From contig NW_021835186.1 of assembly GCF_006345805.1 (NCBI RefSeq), positions 1 to 42,961 of the forward strand: a stretch of 42,961 nucleotides of DNA, read 5' to 3'. This document shows positions 1 through 42,948 of this stretch, in pieces (position 1 is the stretch's first letter; each line of letters opens with the position of its first letter). A model generated the notes under the pieces. That model saw nothing but the letters and a program-made list of their open reading frames with translations, did not search any database and was not told the origin of the DNA. The DNA comes from Octopus sinensis. Lineage: Eukaryota. A program made the position numbers and the translations under genes.

Positions 1-358
1 GGGTACGAATTTCACCAACAGTCTCCACATGCACAAATCCTCCGTTAAAATGGAATGCACTGATCCTGTGCTTGTTCCCACTTCATCAACAATTTCCTGG
101 ATTGTTACCTGACTGTCTTCCACGATCATTCGCTGAACCTTCTCAATCGTTCTGGTTTGTGGATGGCTACCCTGAGTGTGCCTTGCTCTCTACTAAGGTG
201 CAGCCATGTCTGAATCAGTTGTACCACTCCTTGATCTGAGTTTTGTCCATGGCTTCATCGCCAATGGTCTGCTGAGTCTTCTGGATGGTGCGATCTTGAG
301 TATCATCAAGCTCCTGGCAAAATTTCATGTAATATCTCTGCTCGATAAGATCGGTTTT
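1..358 (-). pseudogene. Mariner transposase N-terminal (HTH) remnant
   Basis: Manual translation gives TDLIEQRYYMKFCQELDDTQDRTIQKTQQTIGDEAMDKTQIKEWYN*FRHGCTLVESKAHSG*PST, a frameshift, then IEKVQRMIVEDSQVTIQEIVDEVGTSTGSVHSILTEDLCMWRLLVKFVP. This matches the mariner IEQR..IKF / SGRPST / V.akFVP pattern. Stops and a frameshift make it non-functional. Confidence 0.85.
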
Positions 359-563
359 CTTGCGGGGAAACGAAAATCCGTCAAACGCACACTACACGCC
401 TGTACTCTAGGCGTAGCAACCGGAAATTGACGCGGCCTATCGGCGCGAAAATGTTCACGCGCGCAGGAAAGGTAGCATCACGTCCCATCCAAAGGGTTTT
501 TGGTCACGTGGCATTAGCTTCGGCAGGAAAAAGTAACAACGGATACTTTTTGAACGCACCTCG
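1..563 (-). mobile_element. Mariner (Tc1/mariner) element, left end with TIR; runs off window start
   Basis: Minus strand begins TA|CGAGGTGCGTTCAAAAAGTATCC (TA at 564-565), a mariner-type terminus, and is followed by a degenerate transposase N-terminus. Confidence 0.85.
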
Positions 564-3001: not shown

Positions 3002-3324
3002 GTGAGGGCGCGTGGCTTAGTGGTTAGGGCATTCGGCTCATGATCGTAAGGTTGTGAGTTCGATTCCGGCGACGCGTTGTGTCCTGAGCAAGACACTTTA
3101 TTCACGTTGCTCCAGTCCACTCAGCTGGCAAAAATGAGTTGTACTTGTATTTCAAAGGGTCAGCCTTGTCACTCTCTGTGTCACGCTGATTATCCCGAGA
3201 ACTACGTAAGGGTACACGTGTCTGTGGAATGCTCAGCCATTTGCACGTTAATTTCACGAGCAAGCTGTTCCGTTGATCGTATCAGCTGGGACCCTCGTCG
3301 TCGTAACCGGCGGAGTCTTTTTTT
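3002..3324 (+). mobile_element. Full-length tRNA-derived SINE (OR2-like head, CORE/Meta-like centre, tail type T1)
   Basis: A box TGGCTTAGTGG, B box GTTCGATTCC, centre TGTGTCCTGAGCAAGACACTTTA. A 13-bp TSD TAAATAAACGGGA lies at 2989-3001 and 3325-3337. Confidence 0.9.
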
Positions 3325-8546: not shown

Positions 8547-9112
8547 TTGGGTTGTCCGGAAAGTTCGTGCCGATTTTTAAAGGAAAGAAAAAGGTCAATA
8601 AATATTTGCCATTACATTTTTAATCAACCAAATATGAACCATTTTGTTGCACAATGCGTCTCCATCTTCCTTTAACTTGAAAATACCCTCTTTCCCGGAT
8701 TGAGGGTGGTTTCTTGGCAAAGAATTCATCAAGGTATCTTTTTATGTCATCCAAGGAATTGAAATTTTTACCATTAACACTATTCTGCAGAGACCTGAAT
8801 AAGTGGAAATCCGAAGGAGCAATATCTGGTGAATATGGAGGGTGGGGTAACACATTCCAGCCGAGCTGTAGCAATTTTTCTCTGGTTCCCAAAGCATCAA
8901 GTACCGAAAATGAACTTTCTTACCTTCCATTTTAAAGGGTTACGAAATTAACATAAGTTATAGGAACATAAACCTTCTTCCAAGAAAAGATAGCTTAAAC
9001 TGTGCTCTAAATGGAGGTGTAGTCAAATCCTATTTTATGGACTCAACAATGTTCTAAAATAAGTCGAAATGTAAGCTACTATAAATCGGCACGAACTTTC
9101 CGGACAACCCAA
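8547..9112 (-). mobile_element. Internally deleted mariner (566 bp) with perfect 30-bp TIRs
   Basis: TIR TTGGGTTGTCCGGAAAGTTCGTGCCGATTT is identical at 8547-8576 and 9083-9112. TA at 9113-9114; CA on the left (likely mutated TA). Confidence 0.95.
8620..8930 (-). pseudogene. Mariner transposase N-terminus fused out of frame to its C-terminus
   Basis: MEGKKVHFRYLMLWE (8930 start) joins at ~8887 to TREKLLQLGWNVLPHPPYSPDIAPSDFHLFRSLQN...WRRIVQQNGSY, which contains the mariner YSPD(L/I)APSD motif. The first two catalytic Asp and the DNA-binding domain are deleted. Confidence 0.92.
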
Positions 9113-10680: not shown

Positions 10681-11139
10681 CACATGCACACACACAGAGA
10701 AAAAACCGGCAAAACAGTATAGTGAATTTGCCGTGGGGAGTGGAAAGTCAAACGTTTCGGACAAAGTCATTCTTCCTGTTTACAGGTAAGAATTTATGAG
10801 AAGCAGTAAGTGATAAGGTACGCAGACCTACAATGAGTTTGTTTGATCGTATATAAATGTATGTGTGTATATACACACACGCACGCACGTACGCACGCGC
10901 GCACACACACACATAAATGTGTGTTGTTGATGACAACAGTAACTTTAAGCTTAATACAAAATTCAATGGCTAGGAGGCGGAGTCAAATGGAAGTACTACT
11001 GTTGCAATAAGGTTTGCGTTACACATTCATATTCACGCACACATTGTACATATTACTTTAATAACACTTTTATACATTAGCAGGACTGTTGTAGTTGAAA
11101 CTAGGGATTTTAAAATATGATATTCGAGAAGTTGTGTAG

Positions 11140-11465
11140 CTCGGTGGTTTCTCTAGGTTGAGCTGCTTCTTCTTCGCATAGGGAGTGACAACTCCGGGAC
11201 TACAGACATGTATTTTAGAATGTCTCAGGAAAGGATTGCAAGACGGATTCTTCAAGCCGAGCCAAATGATAGGAGACCAAGGGCTCGACCAAGGACAAGA
11301 TCGTTGGAGAATATCCATAGTCTCAGTTAATCACGCTTGGGAGGCCTAATGACAATTGCTTCTGATCGGATCGTACAGAGGAGGTTCCCTTGGACTCTAA
11401 ACTCATGACCCTATTATTAGGCGAAGCGGGTGGAAAAGATGGCTGGAGGGTCAGATAGATAGATA
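11140..11465 (+). pseudogene. RTE-clade LINE 3' end (Rex3/Expander-like)
   Basis: VELLLLRI...FRMSQERIARRILQAEPNDRRPRARPRTRSLENIHSLS*SRLG matches the RTE C-terminal GRRPRGRPRTRW motif. GATG/GATA-type tail. Homologous to 39270-39680. Confidence 0.8.
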
Positions 11466-11591
11466 TTCGAAATCCAGTACTCGTTGCCTGTCCTGTGATA
11501 CACAGGTCGTATTTCCCTGATACACATTCCCAAGTTTTCAACGTATGATTAACATGGACATATGAAAGGAAAGCTTGATAATTATTCAGAA

Positions 11592-11972
11592 CTAGCAGTA
11601 TCGCCCGGCGTTGCTCAGGTTTGTAAGGGAAATAACTATAAAGTATTTTTAGAGAGTTATAGCCAAAAAATAGCCAAAAAATGGAAAAAAATGATGGTAA
11701 ATTTTTTTTGAGAGTTAAAAAAGGTGGAGTTGCGTCCCCTAGACAGTTTGCTGTTTGTGTTTCTGATTCTCGACCCCATGTCGAATTTATCGATTTTTTC
11801 AGAACTGGGGTAACTTTTCAAAATTTTCGCTGCGTTAGTTTTGAATTATGACATTGGGCTATGTGTGTGTCAAGTTTCATCAGAATCGGTTGAAAGCCGT
11901 GGTCAGGGTGAGGGTACAAGCAAACAGACACACAGAAACACGCACAGACAAACTGCCGTTTATATATAGAGA
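11592..11972 (-). mobile_element. Non-autonomous Helitron (Lep1-like architecture)
   Basis: Minus strand starts TC(TC)TATATATAAACGGCAG and ends CCTGAGCAACGCCGGG (hairpin) + CGATACTG-CTAG followed by T. No TSD or TIR. The 5' end is uncertain by about 2-4 bp. Confidence 0.8.
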
Positions 11973-12397: not shown

Positions 12398-13195
12398 GAA
12401 CACGATTAACGACAGGTTAATCACAATTAAAAGATTATTAGTGCATTAGTGATGTGTTCAATTAAAAAAAAAACTGATTGCACCTGTTACCCTTAATATT
12501 CGCTTTGACCCCCCCCCCTAGTATTAATTTCTATTCAATGCTCCCCCACTCCAAGGAGAAGCACTCATATTTCGGTATATGACACATGTAAAATAAAAAA
12601 AATCCTAGTCTTTGACACAAATGCCGAAATAACACTAGTCACTGACATGGTTTTAACAAATTAAGAGAATGAACGAAAGACGAGGAGAGAGAAAGAGAGC
12701 GGGGGAGGAGAGAGAGTGAGTGAAAAATTGCGAAATATTTGGTAATTTCATCGTTGCTTCAGTTTAGTTGCAAAAGGAACTATTGTTTGCAAATTATACG
12801 TGTTAAACAGTAAAAAGAAAGGAACTTACACACACGCACACACATGCACACACACACACGCACTGCTCCAGCATGGAGCTAGCCGTAATAACTACATCAA
12901 GCTAAATGTATACACACATACACACCTTTGGATATTATTAAAAAATGGAGATTTTTAAAAAAGCATAACGCATTTTCGAAGTATGTTTGTTAATAGCAAA
13001 CCATAGACTAACAACACTATACAGTTTCTGTAAGAAATATTTTTGTTCTTCATTCATTTTTCGGTCTTATTTGTCTTTTTGAACACTTTGAAACAGTCGC
13101 CTGTATTAAATGCTTACTTATTTGTTTTTTGTTTTTTTTGGCATCTTAATTTTTTTTTTCTTCTTTTTTTTTTTTGCAATTAAAAGAAAATGTCA

Positions 13196-13290
13196 TCTTA
13201 CCAACATCTTCAAACTTCAAAAGTACTTACCTGAAAAAAAAAAAAAATACAGAGGAAAATAAAAAGGTCATTGAATGTAAAAAAAAGTTT
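13196..13290 (-). other. Candidate recursive splice site: 3' acceptor directly abutting a 5' donor, with a second donor 29 nt downstream
   Basis: Minus strand reads ...TTTTATTTTCCTCTGTA-T14-CAG|GTAAGT (13233-13225), then TTG|GTAAGA (13201-13196). No AG occurs for ~55-60 nt upstream of the acceptor. Confidence 0.45.
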
Positions 13291-13335
13291 AAAACACTCT
13301 GATCAAGTAAAGTTATTAATAAGTTATAAAATGCA

Positions 13336-13589
13336 TTGGGTTGTCAGATAAATTCGTTCGTTATTATTATTTTTTTATGGTCATATTTATTTTAATCCTT
13401 TCCAGTGTTCTTTTTCATTTTTCTTTTTTTGTAGCTCTATTCTTTCCCTGCAACTTTTGTTTATCGTGTTTGAAATTTGTACGAGTTTTACCTTTCCAGG
13501 CATATGACGATGGATTGTCAAGTAGGAAAAGCAGAAAAAAATAAAAGAAAAAAAAGAAAGAAAACGAACGAATTTATCTGACAACCTAA
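13336..13589. mobile_element. Tc1/mariner MITE (254 bp)
   Basis: 27-bp TIRs TTGGGTTGTCAGATAAATTCGTTCGTT match at 26/27. TA at 13590-13591. The first 10 bp equal the mariner TIR at 8547. Confidence 0.9.
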
Positions 13590-13639
13590 TAAACGAAGAA
13601 AATACCTGTACTTAACATCTACCTTAACGTCTGTTGTTT

Positions 13640-20094: not shown

Positions 20095-20296
20095 TTATTG
20101 CTTCCAAATTTTGGCACAAGGCCAGCAATTTCAGGAGATAGGTTAAGTCGATTAGATCGACCTCCAGTGCTCAACTAGTATTTATTTTATCGACTCCGAA
20201 ATGATGAAAGACAAAATCGACCTCGGCGGAATTTGAACTTAGAACATAAAGACGCTAAGCATTTGGCCGGGCATGCTAACGATTCTGCCAGCTCGC
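20095..20296 (-). mobile_element. Nin-domain-like SINE, near full length
   Basis: TTTTGGCACAAGGCC tail, TTTATCGACTCCGAAATGATGAAAG..TCGACCTCGGCGGAATTTGAAC body, and CTAACGATTCTGCCAGCTCGC head. Confidence 0.85.
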
Positions 20297-22645: not shown

Positions 22646-22905
22646 AGTTCACGTGACCGACCAGACTATTAGGTGTTACACATTGCTGGTCACAATGTGC
22701 TTTTGCATTGTTTTAGCCTTCATATGACGCCACCCCACTGGCTATACGAGCAGGTCAACAATCCCCCCTCATCGAAGGGGGACTGGAGCGATGTGAAACG
22801 AAGTGTTTTGCTCAAGAACACAACGCGCCGCACAGTCTGGGAATCGAACCCACGATCTAGCGATCGTGAGTGCAACAGCCTAACCACTAGGCTACGTGCC
22901 TTCAC
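22646..22905 (-). mobile_element. tRNA-derived SINE (OR2-like head and core, distinct tail T3)
   Basis: Minus strand GTGAAGGCACGTAGCCTAGTGG..GTTCGATTCCC..TTGTGTTCTTGAGCAAAACACTT, then a tail unlike that of 3002-3324. Confidence 0.85.
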
Positions 22906-23175: not shown

Positions 23176-23344
23176 AAAGTCTATGAGGATTACTTAACAC
23201 AGTTTTTGAAGTGTGAAGATGATTTTTTAAAAAAATGTTACGAAATAGGGACATTAAATATTAGGCTGTCAAATAAAATTCCTTTTTCTTTCTTTTACTT
23301 GTCACTCCATCGTCATTTGTCTGAAAAGAAGTAAAATTTATTCA

Positions 23345-23700
23345 CATGGTTCCGGGTTCAGTCCCACTGCGTGGCATCTTGGGCAAGTGTCTTCTGCTAT
23401 AGCCCCGGGTCGACCAATGCCTTGTGAGTGGATTTGGTAGACGGAAACCGAAAGAAGCCTGCCGTATATATGTATATATATATATATATGTATGTATGTG
23501 TGTGTGCGTTTGTCCCCCTAGCATTGCTTGACAACCGATGCTGGTGTGTTTACGTCACCGTCACATAGCGGTTCGGCAAAAAAGACCGATAGAATAAGTA
23601 CTGGGCTTACAAAGAATAAGTCCCGGGGTCGATTTGCTCGACTAAAGGCGGTGCTCCAGTATGGCAGCAGTAAAATGACTGAAACAAGTAAAACAGAAAA
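23345..23700 (+). mobile_element. OK-like SINE, 5'-truncated, low divergence
   Basis: CATGGTTCCGGGTTCAGTCCCACTGCGTGGC...GGGGTCGATTTGCTCGACTAAAGGCGGTGCTCCAG...GACTGAAACAAGTAAAA. Confidence 0.92.
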
Positions 23701-23940: not shown

Positions 23941-25144
23941 TGTCAATATAAAAAGACGTTTGATGTCTGATTTCCTTTATTACACTATCTATTACTTAAA
24001 TGTTGTGGAACGTAAAACAGGAGAGTAGGTTAGATACCATTAAAAAAAAATCTCGTTATTCAATTTCCTTTCAAAGCAAACAAGTCCTTAACTGAGAGAG
24101 TGAGAGAGAATGGAGTCCTCCCAATCCAAGGGCATATCACGTCAGTGGTGAACTTAAACCCGATGGCATACCTCAGCTGCTATGAAACTTCTTATGACGA
24201 TCGATGATATGATCACTTTGATCTAGCAGCAGATATTGTGGATTAGGGCAGAGTTGAACTAAAAAGGACTTATAAAGTATTAACAATTATAATAGACGCA
24301 CATCGATTTTCCGGAACCTTTCCTGATTACAAATTTTTTTTTCCGAACCAGAGGTGGTCACCTTGGTCAACATAATCTAATTTAAATGCATATCAAATTA
24401 AATGTAAGGGTATTTGTACATTAGTTGGGATTATAAAATTTTACGGACTATCAGTGTCCGGAAAATTGACTTTGTACCTGTACGTATTTGTTGTCTAGTC
24501 ACGATTTACATCTATGATCAAAGGTATTTCAATTATGACGATCTCGTCTTTTCACATGCGAATACATTCTGTAATGTGTCCTTCCGTTTTTAGAAAAAAC
24601 CAGTAGGTTGTAATTTATTAGAATTTGGTTGTTATCTCGACTAACAACATAGAGGCACGATCGTAGGCTACTTAAAACACATAACTTACAGACAATTGAA
24701 TAAATTTAATAACAAGCCTGTCTTGTAATCGAAGCAAACATAGAGGAACTGTGGAATTACTTTCTACGGAAAGATTTCACTTCCGGTAATATTTCCACTC
24801 ATCCTCGTGTTATAATAATAATAAACAGGTTGCCAGATTTCACAAAATTTACAATGTTAGGCAATATATAATAAGGCAGATTTTGCTAGATCTGCAAACA
24901 GCCCTAATTCATCTCTACATCATGATGTCAAGAATTCATATTTAACTACTGAATACAATTTGACTAACCTGATTCTGAAAATTGAGCAAAAACAAAAACA
25001 AAAAAAAAGACAAAAAACAGCAACTGTTACAAATTCTATCCGCTATTATGCAGCCTTGTTTTCTATATTTTCCTATATCTTTTACAGCTAGGGCACCAAA
25101 AATCTTAAATATTGAGGTGCAGAAAACACACACACACACACACA

Positions 25145-25369
25145 TAAGGTGGTCAGTTAAATTCGTTCATTTTCCTCCATTCATTTTAATTCTTTCCAAA
25201 GTTATCTGAACACGAAAAATATTTTTACCGTAGTGTTTTATGCCTCTATTCTTCCTCTACAACTTTTGTATACCACTTTTGAAATTTGAATAAATTTTAC
25301 TTTTTTTCAGACAAATGACGATGGAGTGGCAAGTAAAAGAAAGAAAAAGGAATTTATTTGACAGCCTAA
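25145..25369. mobile_element. Diverged Tc1/mariner MITE (TIRs related to 13336-13589; body shared with 40411-40659)
   Basis: Left end AAGGTGGTCAGTTAAATTCGTTCA; right end GAATTTATTTGACAGCCTAA + TA. Internal AACGAAAAATATTTTTAC.GTAG is shared with ~40483-40506. Confidence 0.7.
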
Positions 25370-26189
25370 TATTTAATGTCCCTATTATTTTTCATAATTA
25401 ACGTGTCAAAACCCTAAATATATGACGCTTATTGAAGTGCAAAGGAAGAATTATATATATATAAATAAAGGATTCGGGCGAAAAACGTTCTCAGAACAAT
25501 GTATTAAATGTCATTTATTGTAAGATTCGTTTGAGAAACAGAAACTCTATTTTTATAACACGAGACACAGAGAATGCGGGGGGTGGGGGCGTAGCACTCT
25601 AAATTCTGCGGCGAAATTTTGTAGTTTCTTCCATAAAACTCTCGATCGAAGAGCAGATGGTAGAATCAGAAGAGCCTTAGACAAAAGTATCGTCTTCCAT
25701 TTGGTTATGTTGTTTCATTTTCCGAGTTCAAATCTTGCCCGGATCATTATTGCTTGTCGTTCTTTCTAAATTGATAAAAATAGTTATCTTGCAAGTACTG
25801 GAGTGGATAAATCAAATGATAATAATAATAATCCTTGAAAATTGTGCCAGTCTAGACTAAGCAACATTTGACAATTTAGTATTTTTTCACAGGCAGGATT
25901 AAAAAGGCCCATTCCCACCTAATTTTGATCTTTTTTTTTTAAAGATTTTTGTTAATAACGACCTAAAAATGCTATATATTAGCAATGTTACAAGCATTCA
26001 AGAGTTCAGTGAAATTATTTCAATGTCTCATTTAATGATGAAATTAAGTATAGTTCAATAACCTTGTGTGTTCGTCATCCTTGTTTATCTTTCGAACGTT
26101 AGCTTCTTTAAGAAAGTACAAACGCAAAAATTTCATCTTAGGTGCAAATGTCTTCTACTACATTCTTGAACCAATCAGTGCCGTTTCAG

Positions 26190-31719: not shown

Positions 31720-32010
31720 TGAAGGCGCATGGCTTAGTGGTTAGTGTGTTGCACTCACGATTGTGAGATCGTGGGTTCCATTCCCAGACCGGGCGTTGCG
31801 TTATGTTCATGAGCAAAGCACTTCATTTCACGTTGCTCTGCGATCATTTCGAAATCTGACATGTGGTACCCGGTTACACCTGTACAAGTAATGTCGATTT
31901 GATGGAGCGAGTGAGCTTATATGTACACAGACATTTGATCACTATAAACAAATCATGTGTGGTTGTTCGGTAAGAAATTGTCGAAACCTCATACGTCGTC
32001 AAACAACGGA
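31720..32010 (+). mobile_element. tRNA-derived SINE (OR2-like head and core, tail T4)
   Basis: TGAAGGCGCATGGCTTAGTGG..GGGTTCCATTCCC..TTCATGAGCAAAGCACTT..TTGCTCTGCGATCA. The tail matches the reverse complement of 38130-38290. Confidence 0.85.
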
Positions 32011-32019
32011 AGAGTCCAT

Positions 32020-33016
32020 AATATACATTACATACACACACACACATATATATATATACATATATATACATACACACACACATATATATATACACATATA
32101 TATATATACATACACACACACACACATATATATATATACACATACATACATATATACATATATATATCATATATATATATATATTATACATATATATAAT
32201 ATACATACATACATACATATATATATAGACATATATATATATATATATATACATATTATATATACACACATACATACTATATATATACATATTATATACA
32301 TATATATACAACATATATATACATATATATACATATATATATACATATATATATACTATATATATATACATATATATACATATATAGATATACATACATA
32401 TACATACATTTATATACATACATATATATACGTATATATACATATATAGATACATACATATATATACATATATATATACATACATATATATACATATATA
32501 TATACATACATATATATATACATATATATATACATACATATATATAATACATACATACATATATACATACATATATATATATACATACATACATATATAC
32601 ATACATAATATATATATATACATATATATATACATATATATATATACATTATATATACATATGTATACATATATATATACATATGTATACATATATATAT
32701 ACATATATATATATACATAATATATACTATATATACATATATATATACATATATATACATATATATACATATATATAACATACATATATTATATACATAT
32801 ATATAATATACATACATATATACATATATATACTATATATATACATACATATATATATATATATACATATATATATACATACATATATATATATATATAC
32901 ACATATATATATACATACATATATATATATATATACATACATATATATATATACATACATATATATATATACATACATATATATATATACATACATACAT
33001 ATAAATATATACATAC

Positions 33017-33053
<37 letters not shown>

Positions 33054-33437
33054 CATACATATATATATATATACATATACATATATATACATACATATAT
33101 ATATATATACACATACATATACATAAACATACATATATATATATATACATACATATACATATATATATACATACATATTATATACATAATATATATACAT
33201 CATATATATACATATATATACATAATATATACATATATATAATATACATATATATATACATATATATACATATATATATATACATACATATACATACATT
33301 TATATACATACATATATATACGTATATATACATATATATATACATACATATATATACATATATATATACATACATATATATACATATAATATATACATAC
33401 ATATATATATACATATATATACATACATATAATATAC

Positions 33438-33470
<33 letters not shown>

Positions 33471-33471
33471 C

Positions 33472-33502
<31 letters not shown>

Positions 33503-34239
33503 CGTATATATACATATATATATACATATATTATACATATATATATACATATGTATACATATATATACATATGTATACTATATATATACATATATAGATA
33601 TACATATATATATACATATATATACATATATATATACATACATATATATACATATATATACATATATATATACATACATATATATATATACACATATATA
33701 TATACATACATATATATACATATATATACATATATATATACATACTATATATATATATATATACATATATATATACATACATATATATATATATATACAC
33801 ATATATATATACATACATATATAATATATATATACATACATATATTATATACATACATATATATATATACATACATATATATATATACATACATACATAT
33901 AAATATATACATACATATATACTACATATATATACATACATATATATATACAACATATATAATATATACATATACATATATATACATACATATATATATA
34001 TATACACATACATATACATACATACATATATTATTATATACATACATAATACATATATATATACATACATATATATATACATACATATATACATACATAT
34101 ACATACATATATACTACATATATATATCATACATATACATACATATATATATACATACATATATACATATATATATACATTCATATATATACATATATAT
34201 ATACATACATATACATATATATATACATACATATATACA

Positions 34240-34277
<38 letters not shown>

Positions 34278-34281
34278 CATA

Positions 34282-34319
<38 letters not shown>

Positions 34320-34373
34320 ATACATACATATACATACATACATATACATACATACATATACATACATACATAC

Positions 34374-34412
<39 letters not shown>
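32020..34412. repeat. ~2.4-kb compound (TA)/(TACA)/(CA) array with an ~890-bp internal duplication
   Basis: Plus strand almost G-free. Rare variant words recur at offsets of 890 and 898 bp. Confidence 0.95.
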
Positions 34413-34415
<3 letters not shown>

Positions 34416-34624
34416 AGCAAAGTAGCTAGTTCTAAAATCTCTGAATGAGATATTAAGTAGTAACGATACTAGATGACAACGTATTTTTTGCCATTATAAC
34501 ATGGTTGTTCTATACGGAACTATGTTACTACATTTTAGCCCCAGGAAAATGTCTTTTCTAGCTGGTTAACGAACAGGCATGATATATTATATATACATAT
34601 ATATAAATTATATATTATCTACAT

Positions 34625-34658
<34 letters not shown>

Positions 34659-35178
34659 ATAATCTACATATATATATATATATAATATATTATCTACACA
34701 CACACATATATATATATATAAATTTATATTATCTACATATATATAATATATATATATATATAAATTTATATATCATCTACATATATATGTGTGTGTGAGG
34801 CACAAAACAGTGTATGTCCCAAAATCTTAAACATAAAGTATATCAAATGATAAAACAACAGGAATTTTAGCCATTGTTTTTGTTTGTAATCGGATAAACG
34901 TCGATAATTGTAAACGGATGTGTTGTTTACCTCTCTCTCTCTCTCTCTCTGCGAGTTAAGAAGGATTGGTCTGTTTGACAGAAAAGTAGAAAAAGATATT
35001 CATTTTAACATATCCATGTGTATTCGATTACATCTACTCTCTTTCTCTCACACACACTTTACACACCACTTATTCATATTTTACAGGACACAATTTGTAA
35101 ACTTTATAATGAATCATTTAGCGTTGTATGCTTAAGGATGTTGATATAGAAACAGAAAGCCAATCTATTCCTTTTGCG

Positions 35179-38762: not shown

Positions 38763-39269
38763 CACCTTCACGAGAGTTAATTTATTAATATGATTATAAA
38801 AGTATATGCGATAGCTCTTTAACACAGAAAATACCAAAAAAAATCATTGATCTAATCCGACAATTTGGCTGTCCTTAGTTTGGATCATTGGGTTCACGAA
38901 TGGTGCATTGCAAGGAAATATCTGTGCAGTGGAATTTTAGAAAAACTAGCATCTTGAAAAACGTGTTATTCAGGATTTAGTTAATTCTACACAAGTAAAA
39001 TTAATAAAAACCAAGCAAACAATTGTATGCTATATTTTTTCTAAAATCTTGACCTTAAAAAATAATTTATGGTTGCTTTTTCATCAAATTTTCATATGAA
39101 ATATTACAGCAATTTTTTAAAAAATTGATTGCTAGTGTGCAATGAGGTAAAAAAAAGAATGAACTGCAGGTTTACTTAGAGACTAGTAAAAGAAAAGAAA
39201 AAAAAAGGGCCAAACTCGCTCATTTTCAATTCTGTTTTTGAACCTAATTTCAACCGATGGTCATGAGTT

Positions 39270-39680
39270 TTGAGTAAAAGAATACGATCGCGAATACAAG
39301 CAGTCGAAGTTCGATTCCACCGAAAAATCTTTCGGGAAACGTTACTCGACAGAGTGCATAACTTATATATCAAGGAGACTCTCCAGGTCGAGCAGCTTCT
39401 TCTTCGCACTGAGAGGTCACAGCTCTGGTGCTATGAATATGTAATTAGAGTGACACAGAAACGGATCGCGAAACAGAGTCTTCAAGCCAAGCTAACCGGC
39501 ATGAGATTGAGTAGACCAAAAATGTGATGGTTGGATAACATCCATAGTCTCATTTGGAAAGCTGCTTCCGATAGAACCCTATGGAGGGGTTATCTGTGAA
39601 CTCCATTCCCACTATCCTCCCAGGAATAATGGGCAGCGAAGATGGATGGATGGAAGGGCAGACGGATGGACTGACTTCCA
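39270..39680 (+). pseudogene. RTE-clade LINE 3' end (Rex3/Expander-like) with (GATG)n tail
   Basis: RIRSRIQAVEVRFHRKIFRETLLDRVHNLYIKETLQVEQLLLRTERSQLW...WLDNIHSL matches Rex3-type VEPLLLHIERSQLRW; followed by GAAGATGGATGGATGG. Confidence 0.82.
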
Positions 39681-39728
39681 GTGTGCCACAAAATTAAGAA
39701 GAATGAGAACCAAGGGTTTATGAGAGAC

Positions 39729-40410: not shown

Positions 40411-40659
40411 CTGAATTGTCAGATAAAAGCATTTGTTCCCCCTTTCTTCTTTATCTTAATCCTTCTAACGTTATTTGAATTAAAACGAAAAATATTTTTA
40501 CGGTAGTATTTTATGGCATTTTGTAGTTCTATTTCTTTCCTCAACTAACTTTTGTTCATCGCTTTTGAATTAGAATAATTTTACCACTTTTCTGACATAC
40601 GAAGACAGAGTGCTAGGTAGGGAGGGGGAATAAACGAAGGGATTTATCTGACAGCCCGA
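40411..40659. mobile_element. Diverged Tc1/mariner MITE (family of 25145-25369)
   Basis: Ends TA-CTGAATTGTCAGATAAA ... TTTATCTGACAGCCCGA-TA; internal segment shared with 25210-25300. Confidence 0.65.
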
Positions 40660-40708
40660 TAAAATAAATACCATCCTTAATATAAACATTATTCTATGAC
40701 TCATGGTG

Positions 40709-42380: not shown

Positions 42381-42948
42381 AATTTCAAAATTTTGGCACA
42401 AGGCCCGCAATTTCGGGGGAAAGGGGGCTAGTCGATTACACCGACTCAAATGCCTAACTGGTACTTATTTTATCGACCCAAAAAGGATGAAAAGCAAAGT
42501 CGATCCCGGCGGAATTTGTAATCAGAACCTAAAAAAGACGGACGAAATAGCTATTTCTTTACTGCCCACAAGAGGCTAAACACAGAGAGGACAAACAAAC
42601 GGATTAAGTCGATTATATCGACCCCAGTAACTGGTACTTATTTAATCGACTCCGAAAGGATGAAAGGCAAAGTCGACCTCGGCGGAATTTGAACTCAGAA
42701 CATAGCGGCAGACGAAATACCAATGTCTTTACTACCCACAGGGGGCTAAACACAGAGAGGACAAACAAGGACAGACAAACGGATTAAGTCGATTAAGGAC
42801 AGACAAACGGATTAAGTACTTAATTTATCGACCCGTAAAGTATGAAAGACAAAGTCGACCTCGGCGGAATTTGAACTCAGAACGTAACGGCAGACGAAAT
42901 ACTGTTAAGCATTTTGCCCAACGTGCCAACCGATTCTAATTGCTCGCC
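42381..42948 (-). mobile_element. Head-to-tail trimer of Nin-domain-like SINE units
   Basis: Units 42381-42550, 42551-42720 and 42721-42902 each contain ATCGAC..CGAAAGGATGAAAG..AAAGTCGA.C.CGGCGGAATTTG and end at GACGAAATA. A single head lies at 42903-42948. Confidence 0.88.

What the first reader, a model, noticed from the sequence alone, without database searches (positions are those of the whole stretch)
13196..13290. Textbook-looking recursive splice site (ratchet point) with an RS-exon-like second donor, minus strand
Seen: the minus strand has ~55-60 nt with no AG, pyrimidine-rich and ending in T14-CAG, followed immediately by the consensus donor GTAAGT (13230-13225). A second donor GTAAGA begins 29 nt further on (13201-13196). 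The site lies in non-repeat sequence between TEs. Established: AG|GTAAGT zero-length exons mediate recursive splicing of very long introns in Drosophila, and vertebrate RS sites are typically followed by a downstream donor that defines a short RS exon. Inference: this window may be inside a giant minus-strand intron of an octopus gene that is removed recursively. I do not know of recursive splicing being described in cephalopods. Alternatives are a 29-nt microexon or chance.
Basis: partly seen in the sequence, partly recalled or inferred. Interest (0 to 1): 0.7.

Follow-up and report, generated by a model that had tools for sequence, protein, structure and literature searches.

The report
Ratchet-point-like splice motif, unvalidated
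The minus strand really carries a near-perfect "acceptor immediately followed by donor" signal of the kind used to remove giant introns in steps. Nothing available here shows that it lies in a gene, is conserved or is ever spliced, so it is a cheap-to-test lead, not a discovery.

Summary
On the minus strand, a 64-nt AG-free stretch (79% pyrimidine up to the CAG) ends in T14-CAG (13247-13231). GTAAGT (13230-13225) follows directly, and a second donor, G|GTAAGA, starts 29 nt further on (13201-13196).

The site meets every sequence-level criterion published for Drosophila ratchet points:
- TT at -5/-6.
- A yUnAy branch candidate at -30.
- A short cryptic exon closed in all three frames.
- A ratchet-point donor stronger than the downstream donor.

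It is the only such site in the window. I expect 0.004-0.02 per window by chance.

The three tests that define recursive splicing could not be run: position in a long sense intron, conservation, and junction or lariat reads. No cephalopod sequence was reachable, and even "octopus" is unverified.

Published background for ratchet-point-like motifs on antisense or intergenic DNA is about 0.1 per 100 kb per strand in 13 animals. A large genome therefore holds many by chance. A second near-consensus site lies on the opposite strand 2.4 kb away.

My estimates are about 55% unselected chance motif, about 1/3 genuine recursive site, and the rest cryptic exon or transposon-derived. If real, it is a new member of a known kind, and the novelty section is filled in on that condition. 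Interest is modest.

The parts
13234..13296 (-). AG-free, T-rich tract (63 nt, 79% pyrimidine, 67% T) ending in a T14 homopolymer (13247-13234). It is the candidate polypyrimidine tract.
   Evidence: AG-free gaps of at least 64 nt are 4.1% of all AG-to-AG intervals in the window.
13259..13263 (-). Candidate branch site TTTAT (yUnAy) with the branch A at 13260, which is -30 from the 3' splice site.
   Evidence: Lariat-mapped branch points of fly ratchet points lie at -21 to -36 with a peak at -30. This is a motif match only; use as a branch point is not shown.
13231..13233 (-). Candidate 3' splice site CAG, with T at -4, -5 and -6.
   Evidence: TT at -5/-6 is present in 99.5% of Drosophila ratchet points.
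13225..13230 (-). Candidate regenerated donor GTAAGT (the ratchet-point donor). CAG|GTAAGTAC matches 10 of 11 positions of the U1-complementary consensus.
   Evidence: It is the only AGGTAAGT on either strand of the window.
13202..13230 (-). Candidate cryptic 29-nt RS exon, GTAAGTACTTTTGAAGTTTGAAGATGTTG. It has a stop in each frame, its length is not a multiple of 3, and it holds two GAAG motifs.
   Evidence: (translations).
13196..13201 (-). Second donor, TTG|GTAAGA. It matches 6 of 11 consensus positions, so it is weaker than the ratchet-point donor.
13112..13117 (-). Third donor-like site, TAA|GTAAGC. It would close an alternative 113-nt exon that also has stops in all frames.
13126..13175 (-). 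A-rich runs (A12, A10, A8, A6) downstream of the second donor. They are complementary to the T14 tract, but only as low-complexity pairing.
   Evidence: The RNA fold of 13310-13110 is not more stable than shuffles (z = +0.74).
13335..13590 (.). Context: a MITE-like element with 42-nt terminal inverted repeats (88% complementary). It lies just upstream of the motif in the minus sense and is not part of it.
   Evidence: Other copies are at 25143-25371, 40416-40691 and 23259-23347.
10766..10811 (+). Control: a second ratchet-point-like site on the opposite strand, TCATTCTTCCTGTTTACAG|GTAAGA. A further donor, GCA|GTAAGT, starts 20 nt downstream.
   Evidence: Its position-weight score is 10.1 against 12.9 for the flagged site.

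Best explanation
The motif is an unselected, chance juxtaposition in AT-rich, low-complexity non-coding DNA. A mononucleotide T-run, one of 29 A/T runs of at least 9 nt in the window, happens to abut a 9-mer that equals the donor consensus CAG|GTAAGT. GTAAG-type strings are common nearby because the sequence is A/T/G-rich.

In cis the element is fully splice-competent. If the minus strand were transcribed through it, the spliceosome would probably use it. But it was not built or kept by selection. Most likely it lies in DNA that is untranscribed or transcribed in the other sense, so it does nothing.

Shown: the anatomy, its rarity per window, and the existence of comparable background sites. 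Inferred: the absence of selection and of use.
For: 1. Published background. Ratchet-point-like motifs occur at 0.07-0.12 per 100 kb per strand on the antisense strand of large introns in all 13 animals examined, and intergenic controls in human and fly gave similar ratios (PMC2773006). Scaled to a genome of about 2.7 Gb, that is thousands of motifs.
2. My own estimates for the much stricter pattern are 0.004-0.02 per 43-kb window. That still means hundreds per large genome, or tens once a second donor is also required.
3. The same window holds a second near-consensus site with its own downstream GTAAGT on the opposite strand, 2.4 kb away. The two cannot both be sense in one intron, so this DNA does make such sites by chance.
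4. Pyrimidine tracts are about 7 times commoner here than shuffles predict. The local sequence is 23.5% GC and is flanked by a MITE and microsatellites.
5. No exon, domain or RNA gene was detected in 43 kb. This is what intergenic DNA looks like.
Against: - The site sits at the extreme top of the motif scale, not at a threshold.
- It combines several independent features expected of real ratchet points: TT at -5/-6, a branch candidate at the modal -30, a 64-nt AG-free stretch (4% of intervals), a weaker downstream donor, and a frame-closed short exon.
- In every invertebrate examined so far (insects and sea urchin), such motifs are 4-22 times enriched on the sense strand of large introns. If the source genome behaves like those, a perfect motif in an exon-free 43-kb stretch has a substantial chance of being real.
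- A small T>A excess on the minus strand in 8 of 9 blocks points, weakly, to minus-strand transcription.
Confidence: 0.55

Rival explanations
1. It is a genuine recursive splice site (ratchet point) with a cryptic 29-nt RS exon in a giant minus-strand intron. The proposed steps are:
1. U2AF binds the T14 tract, and the branch forms at the A at -30.
2. The 29-nt segment is defined as an exon by the downstream G|GTAAGA donor.
3. The upstream exon is ligated at 13230, which regenerates xAG|GTAAGT.
4. The stronger regenerated donor outcompetes the +29 donor, so the cryptic exon is removed with the rest of the intron and leaves no trace in mRNA.
For: All sequence-level criteria are met:
- (Y)nNCAG|GTAAGT.
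- TT at -5/-6, and a branch candidate at -30.
- A short out-of-frame cryptic exon with stops in all frames, and a ratchet-point donor stronger than the RS-exon donor at 10/11 against 6/11 consensus positions.

The site is unique in the window and rare by chance. The 43 kb holds no detectable exon, which fits a very long intron. Sense-strand enrichment of such motifs in sea urchin and insects suggests the mechanism is old in bilaterians. There is a weak T>A skew on the minus strand.
Against: - None of the defining functional tests could be run: intron context, conservation, or junction, lariat and saw-tooth evidence.
- The organism is unverified.
- A 29-nt RS exon is shorter than the roughly 50 nt described for flies.
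- The tract is a perfect homopolymer in low-complexity DNA next to a MITE. That looks young and neutral, not like a conserved island.
- Large vertebrate genomes show almost no sense-strand enrichment (ratio 0.9-1.5). A 2-3 Gb genome may behave likewise.
- An opposite-strand look-alike lies nearby.
Confidence: 0.33
2. It is a real but ordinary cassette, poison or UTR exon of an unannotated minus-strand transcript (mRNA UTR or lncRNA). The 29-nt segment (13230-13202) or the 113-nt segment (13230-13118) would be included in some isoforms instead of being skipped recursively.
For: A strong acceptor is followed by two usable donors, at +29 and +113. Two GAAG motifs in the 29-nt segment resemble purine-rich exonic enhancers; this resemblance is from my own knowledge and was not tested.
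Against: Stops in all three frames of both versions exclude a coding exon. The much stronger donor at the 5' edge would normally win the competition and remove the exon. There is no transcript evidence.
Confidence: 0.06
3. The motif belongs to an interspersed repeat, such as the 3' part of a retroposon whose tail is the A14/T14 run or the A-rich block at 13175-13126. In that case the motif would be present in many genomic copies.
For: The T14 run and the downstream A-rich block look like degenerate poly(A) tails. The window is full of SINE, MITE, mariner and LINE-like fragments.
Against: There is no second copy of 13100-13334 in the window. No target-site duplication was found for either orientation.
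Confidence: 0.06

Closest known systems
Drosophila intronic ratchet points with cryptic RS exons (Ubx, kuz, Bx, luna; Duff et al. 2014/2015; Joseph and Lai 2021, PMC8605326)
   Same: - A juxtaposed acceptor and donor, (Y)nNCAG|GTAAGT.
- TT at -5/-6.
- A branch-site candidate at about -30.
- A short, poorly coding cryptic exon closed by a weaker downstream donor.
- No exon for tens of kb around.
   Different: - No evidence here of a host intron, of conservation, or of junction or lariat reads.
- The cryptic exon would be 29 nt, against about 50 nt in flies.
- The tract is a perfect T14 homopolymer in low-complexity DNA.
- The organism is not an insect, and its identity is unverified.
Vertebrate RS exons (Sibley et al. 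2015, as summarised in PMC5126111 and PMC8605326)
   Same: A YAG|GT site followed by a competing downstream donor. Inclusion of the RS exon would introduce premature stop codons.
   Different: Vertebrate sites were defined by junction reads and saw-tooth coverage in long brain-expressed genes. None of that is available here.
Background ratchet-point-like motifs on antisense and intergenic DNA (Shepard et al. 2009, PMC2773006)
   Same: The same composite motif arises without function at about 0.1 per 100 kb per strand in all animals tested. The opposite-strand site at 10784 is an example in this window.
   Different: The flagged site is a perfect-consensus match, not a threshold-level one, and it also has the downstream donor and an AG-free stretch.
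Neural microexons (30 nt or shorter)
   Same: The length (29 nt) and the strong flanking splice signals.
   Different: Stops in all three frames and a length that is not a multiple of three. It cannot be a coding microexon.

Membership tests
Recursive splice site / ratchet point | [quoted passage not shown] | tested here: met
   T14-CAG|GTAAGT at 13247-13225 on the minus strand. It is the top-scoring of 220 AGGT sites.
Recursive splice site / ratchet point | Prominent pyrimidine tract with TT at -5/-6 (99.5% of fly ratchet points) | tested here: met
   Positions -4 to -17 are all T. The 63 nt upstream are 79% pyrimidine.
Recursive splice site / ratchet point | Branch point A about 21-36 nt upstream (peak at -30) and no intervening AG | tested here: inconclusive
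   TTTAT has its A at -30, and the stretch up to the CAG is AG-free for 64 nt. This is a motif match only; use as a branch point needs lariat reads.
Recursive splice site / ratchet point | Short cryptic RS exon closed by a downstream donor weaker than the regenerated donor, out of frame or carrying stop codons | tested here: met
   A 29-nt segment followed by G|GTAAGA (6/11 consensus positions, against 10/11 for the ratchet-point donor). Stops in all frames. It is shorter than the roughly 50 nt typical of flies.
Recursive splice site / ratchet point | Lies in the sense strand of a long intron (11-133 kb in flies) | not testable with these tools
   No annotated genome of the source organism is reachable. 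No exon, domain or RNA gene was found in the 43 kb, which fits a giant intron or intergenic DNA equally. There is a weak T>A skew on the minus strand.
Recursive splice site / ratchet point | The AG|GT core and its flanks are more conserved than neighbouring intron sequence | not testable with these tools
   No orthologous sequence was obtainable. ORFs around the site have no relatives, and exact-pattern scans of metagenome and prokaryote collections gave 0 hits.
Recursive splice site / ratchet point | RNA evidence: upstream-exon-to-site junction reads, recursive lariats, saw-tooth coverage | not testable with these tools
Coding microexon | An open reading frame through the exon, with a length that preserves the frame | tested here: not met
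   A stop in each of the three frames, and 29 nt is not a multiple of 3.
Interspersed repeat (retroposon tail or SINE) | Multiple copies, and a target-site duplication flanking a poly(A) tail | tested here: inconclusive
   No second copy in the window and no target-site duplication. Genome-wide copy number could not be tested.

The most novel reading that the evidence does not exclude
The window lies in a minus-strand intron longer than 43 kb of a cephalopod (or other non-model invertebrate) gene, and 13231|13230 is a conserved ratchet point with a 29-nt cryptic RS exon. That would be the first recursive splice site described outside insects and vertebrates. It would also point to genome-wide recursive splicing in an animal with vertebrate-sized introns.
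Probability: 0.33. Interest if true: 0.55.

Novelty: new member of a known kind. Interest (0 to 1): 0.3.

Why it matters
Recursive splicing has been shown experimentally only in Drosophila and vertebrates. The paper library held no paper that links it to octopus, and only unrelated papers that also mention cephalopods or molluscs.

Motif statistics suggest the mechanism is widespread in invertebrates but diluted in large vertebrate genomes. A cephalopod combines protostome ancestry with a vertebrate-sized, repeat-rich genome and long neural genes. Whether it uses dedicated ratchet points would therefore help separate two ideas: that recursive splicing scales with intron length, or that it is a lineage habit.

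A single motif cannot answer this. It does give a concrete coordinate to check in public assemblies and total-RNA data. A genome-wide count of sense against antisense motifs would answer the larger question directly.

Tried and rejected
1. **Fetching the locus or its orthologues.**
   - Two ORFs near the site were looked up by exact product, and neither is on record.
   - A concatenation of eight ORFs within about 2 kb of the site gave no hit in 5.8 billion proteins.
   - A 28-mer across the junction gave 0 hits in metagenome and prokaryote contigs.

2. **Finding a host-gene exon.**
   - Pfam on all 187 stop-free stretches of at least 56 codons gave only noise, with a best E-value of 9e-4 among 187 queries.
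   - Rfam and tRNA scans were empty.
   - The statistically unusual 164-codon open stretch at 11326-11817 (minus strand) has no relative among 1.84 billion representatives.
   - The GC-richer patch at 21.9-22.3 kb does not look coding.

3. **Verifying 'octopus'.**
   - The mariner fragment's best relatives are insect mariner/SETMAR at no more than 67% identity.
   - An ORF from a repeat with several copies in the window has no relatives.
   - Repeat sequences used as text queries are not in the paper library.

4. **RNA structure.** Pairing of U14 with the downstream A-runs is not better than shuffles (z = +0.74). Rejected as a feature.

5. **Retroposon-tail origin.** No target-site duplication was found.

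6. **Coding 29-nt microexon.** Rejected, because there are stops in all frames.

8. **Literature.** One search with loose term logic and one for octopus intron statistics gave nothing usable.

Full report
**1. What is in the sequence**

Read on the minus strand, the region is:

...AGAG TGTTTTAAACTTTTTTTTACATTCAATGACCTTTTTATTTTCCTCTGTA-T14-CAG|GTAAGTACTTTTGAAGTTTGAAGATGTTG|GTAAGATGAC...

- T14 lies at 13247-13234, CAG at 13233-13231, and GTAAGT at 13230-13225.
- The second donor GTAAGA lies at 13201-13196, 29 nt after the AG.
- The last AG upstream is at 13298-13297. The AG-free stretch is therefore 64 nt, slightly longer than reported.
- The 63 nt up to the CAG are 79% pyrimidine and 67% T.
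- AGGTAAGT occurs nowhere else on either strand of the 42,961-nt window.

**2. Further anatomy**

- The only yUnAy match within the usual 21-36 nt of the acceptor is TTTAT, with its A at 13260. That is -30.
- The 29-nt segment has a stop in each frame (TGA, TAA, TGA) and is not a multiple of three. So does the 113-nt alternative that ends at a third donor-like site, TAA|GTAAGC at 13117.
- The regenerated donor CAG|GTAAGTAC matches 10 of 11 positions of the U1-complementary consensus. The +29 donor matches 6 of 11.
- Downstream lie A-rich runs at 13175-13126. They can pair with the U14 tract in a minimum-free-energy fold, but the fold is no better than shuffles (z = +0.74). I do not count it as a feature.

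**3. Surroundings**

The window looks like non-coding DNA of a large, repeat-rich animal genome.
- Overall GC is about 35%, and 40 rows of tandem repeats were reported (many overlap). One is a 2.4-kb AT-rich microsatellite at 32046-34412.
- It holds tRNA-like SINE heads, several interspersed repeat families, and mariner fragments. The fragment at 8623-8919 (minus strand) matches mariner/SETMAR proteins carrying PF01359 at E = 2e-35.
- The site itself sits in a 1-kb stretch of 23.5% GC.
- About 40 nt upstream of the AG-free stretch, in the minus sense, a MITE-like element begins. It spans 13335-13590, has 42-nt terminal inverted repeats that are 88% complementary, and has three other copies in the window.
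- The segment 13100-13334 that carries the motif has no second copy in the window. I found no target-site duplication that would make the T14/A14 run a retroposon tail.

No gene was found:
- 187 stop-free stretches of at least 56 codons gave only noise against Pfam.
- Rfam and tRNA scans were empty.
- The longest open stretch, 164 codons at 11326-11817 on the minus strand, has no relative among 1.84 billion proteins.

**4. Is it more than chance?**

Within the window, yes.
- The pattern Y12-N-YAG|GTRAGT is found once, against 0 in 100 dinucleotide shuffles.
- Multiplying the real number of Y12 tract positions (463) by the window's own frequencies of YAG and GTRAGT gives 0.0038 expected sites.
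- Markov simulations give 0.004-0.017.
- With a simple position-weight score, the site is the top of 220 AGGT positions (z = 3.76).
- A second donor within 15-120 nt has a chance probability of 14% for GTRAG or 4% for GTAAG[AT].

Three results temper this.
- Shuffles understate the background. With up to 3 mismatches there are 11 matches against 1.46 expected, because pyrimidine tracts are about 7-fold over-represented in this low-complexity DNA.
- The runner-up site (z = 3.29) is a near-consensus TCATTCTTCCTGTTTACAG|GTAAGA on the opposite strand at 10784. It has its own GTAAGT donor 20 nt downstream, and it lies only 2.4 kb away. At least one of the two must be fortuitous.
- Published counts show ratchet-point-like motifs at 0.07-0.12 per 100 kb per strand on the antisense strand of large introns in all 13 animals examined. 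Human and fly intergenic controls gave similar ratios (PMC2773006, Table 2 and text).

If the genome is about 2.7 Gb (the size I assume for an octopus, from my own knowledge), that means thousands of threshold-level motifs. On my stricter estimates it means hundreds of strict ones, and tens that also have a downstream donor.

**5. Comparison with what defines recursive splice sites**

From the literature read here:
- Fly ratchet points are juxtaposed acceptor and donor consensuses with an unusually strong pyrimidine tract.
- They have TT at -5/-6 in 196 of 197 cases.
- Their branch points lie at -21 to -36 and peak at -30.
- Their host introns are 11-133 kb.
- They show marked conservation and constitutive use (bioRxiv 10.1101/006163; PMC6110457).
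- They need a short cryptic RS exon of about 50 nt. It is poorly conserved and usually out of frame, and its donor is weaker than the regenerated donor (PMC8605326).
- Vertebrate RS exons work the same way, and they carry premature stop codons when included (PMC5126111).

The site meets every criterion that can be read from one sequence. The only departures are a rather short RS exon (29 nt) and a perfectly homopolymeric tract. The defining functional criteria could not be tested. These are the sense orientation in a long intron, conservation, and junction, lariat or saw-tooth evidence.

**6. Attempts to reach the missing evidence**

- Exact-product look-ups of two ORFs near the site found nothing.
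- A homology search with eight neighbouring ORFs found nothing.
- Exact 28-mer scans of the metagenome and prokaryote collections found nothing.
- The organism could not be confirmed. The mariner fragment's closest relatives are insect sequences at no more than 67% identity. An ORF from a repeat with several copies in the window has no relatives at all.
- Indirect strand signals are weak. After masking tandem repeats, the minus strand has a 2.1% excess of T over A in 8 of 9 blocks, but no G/C skew. A/T runs of at least 9 nt favour T on the minus strand 18 to 11. AATAAA counts are 63 on the plus strand and 55 on the minus. All lean towards minus-strand transcription. None is significant once repeat orientation is considered.

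**7. Weighing**

Two quantities matter: the density of fortuitous perfect motifs and the density of selected ones.
- For the former I estimate roughly 6e-4 to 3e-3 per window, including a downstream donor.
- For the latter there are no data in molluscs.

In sea urchin and four insects, the sense strand of large introns carries 4-22 times more such motifs than the antisense strand. In eight vertebrates the ratio is 0.9-1.5.

The following rests on my inference and on assumed genome and gene sizes, not on a tool result. If the source genome had 100-500 dedicated sites, real and fortuitous perfect motifs would be about equally common. If it behaved like vertebrates, fortuitous ones would dominate.

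I therefore put about 1/3 on a selected recursive site and about 55% on an unselected chance motif. The latter includes the minority case in which it happens to lie in a sense intron and is used anyway. About 6% each goes to an ordinary non-coding, poison or UTR exon and to a repeat-derived sequence.

**8. Novelty and value**

No paper in the held library links recursive splicing to octopus.

If real, the site would be a new member of a well-described kind, not a new mechanism. Given the sea-urchin and insect motif enrichment, a specialist would not be greatly surprised. The novelty section is filled in on that condition, although the chance reading is the more probable one.

The lead is cheap to resolve. 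Mapping the window to an annotated assembly and inspecting total-RNA reads at 13230 would settle this site. A genome-wide count of sense against antisense motifs would settle the broader question. Interest is 0.3.

Noticed in passing
window 10766-10825 (+): A second ratchet-point-like site on the opposite strand: TCATTCTTCCTGTTTACAG|GTAAGA, then GCA|GTAAGT 20 nt downstream and AAG|GTACGC 31 nt downstream. It is the runner-up of 220 AGGT sites (z = 3.29). If the window lies in a plus-strand gene, this is the site to look at.
   Followed up: partly
window 13335-13590; also 25143-25371, 40416-40691, 23259-23347: A MITE-like family of about 256 bp with 42-nt terminal inverted repeats (ATTGGGTTGTCAGATAAATTCGTTCG...). 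There are four copies or fragments in 43 kb.
   Followed up: partly
window 32046-34412 and 34582-34788: A microsatellite block of more than 2.4 kb of imperfect (AT)n/(ATAC)n. GC is 12-13% with a strong C-over-G skew. It produces long spurious ORFs made of Y, I, C, M and V.
   Followed up: no
window 1-391 (-) and 8623-8919 (-): Degraded mariner-type transposase fragments. The 8623-8919 piece matches mariner/SETMAR proteins (PF01359) at E = 2e-35, but at no more than 67% identity, and the named top hits are ants and bees. No close copy from the source organism is in the database.
   Followed up: partly
window 11150-11346 (+) and 39179-39720 (+): ORF fragments that, from memory, resemble the C-terminal end of non-LTR retrotransposon ORF2 (...RFHRKIFRETLLDRVHN...SQLW...; ...RRPRARPRTR...). 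Part of each region (11150-11262 and 39380-39492) matches the other in the window's self-comparison, and both fragments lie on the plus strand. Pfam did not confirm them.
   Followed up: no
window 11326-11817 (-): A 164-codon stop-free stretch. I expect about 0.03 of that length in 86 kb of this composition (my own estimate). It has no Pfam match and no relative among 1.84 billion representative proteins. It lies 1.4 kb downstream of the motif on the same strand. Unexplained.
   Followed up: yes
window 3003-3067, 31720-31784 (+); 22760-22900 (-): tRNA-like heads (GGCTTAGTGGTTAGGG...GGTTCGATTCC) of a SINE family. ARAGORN and Rfam call no intact tRNA.
   Followed up: partly
window 42461-42902 (+), also 20178-20264: An 87-nt unit (GTACTTATTTAATCGAC...GGCGGAATTTGAACTCAGAAC...) repeated three times at a spacing of about 175-180 bp near the window end, with a fourth copy at 20.2 kb. 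It is a satellite-like or tandemly inserted repeat.
   Followed up: no
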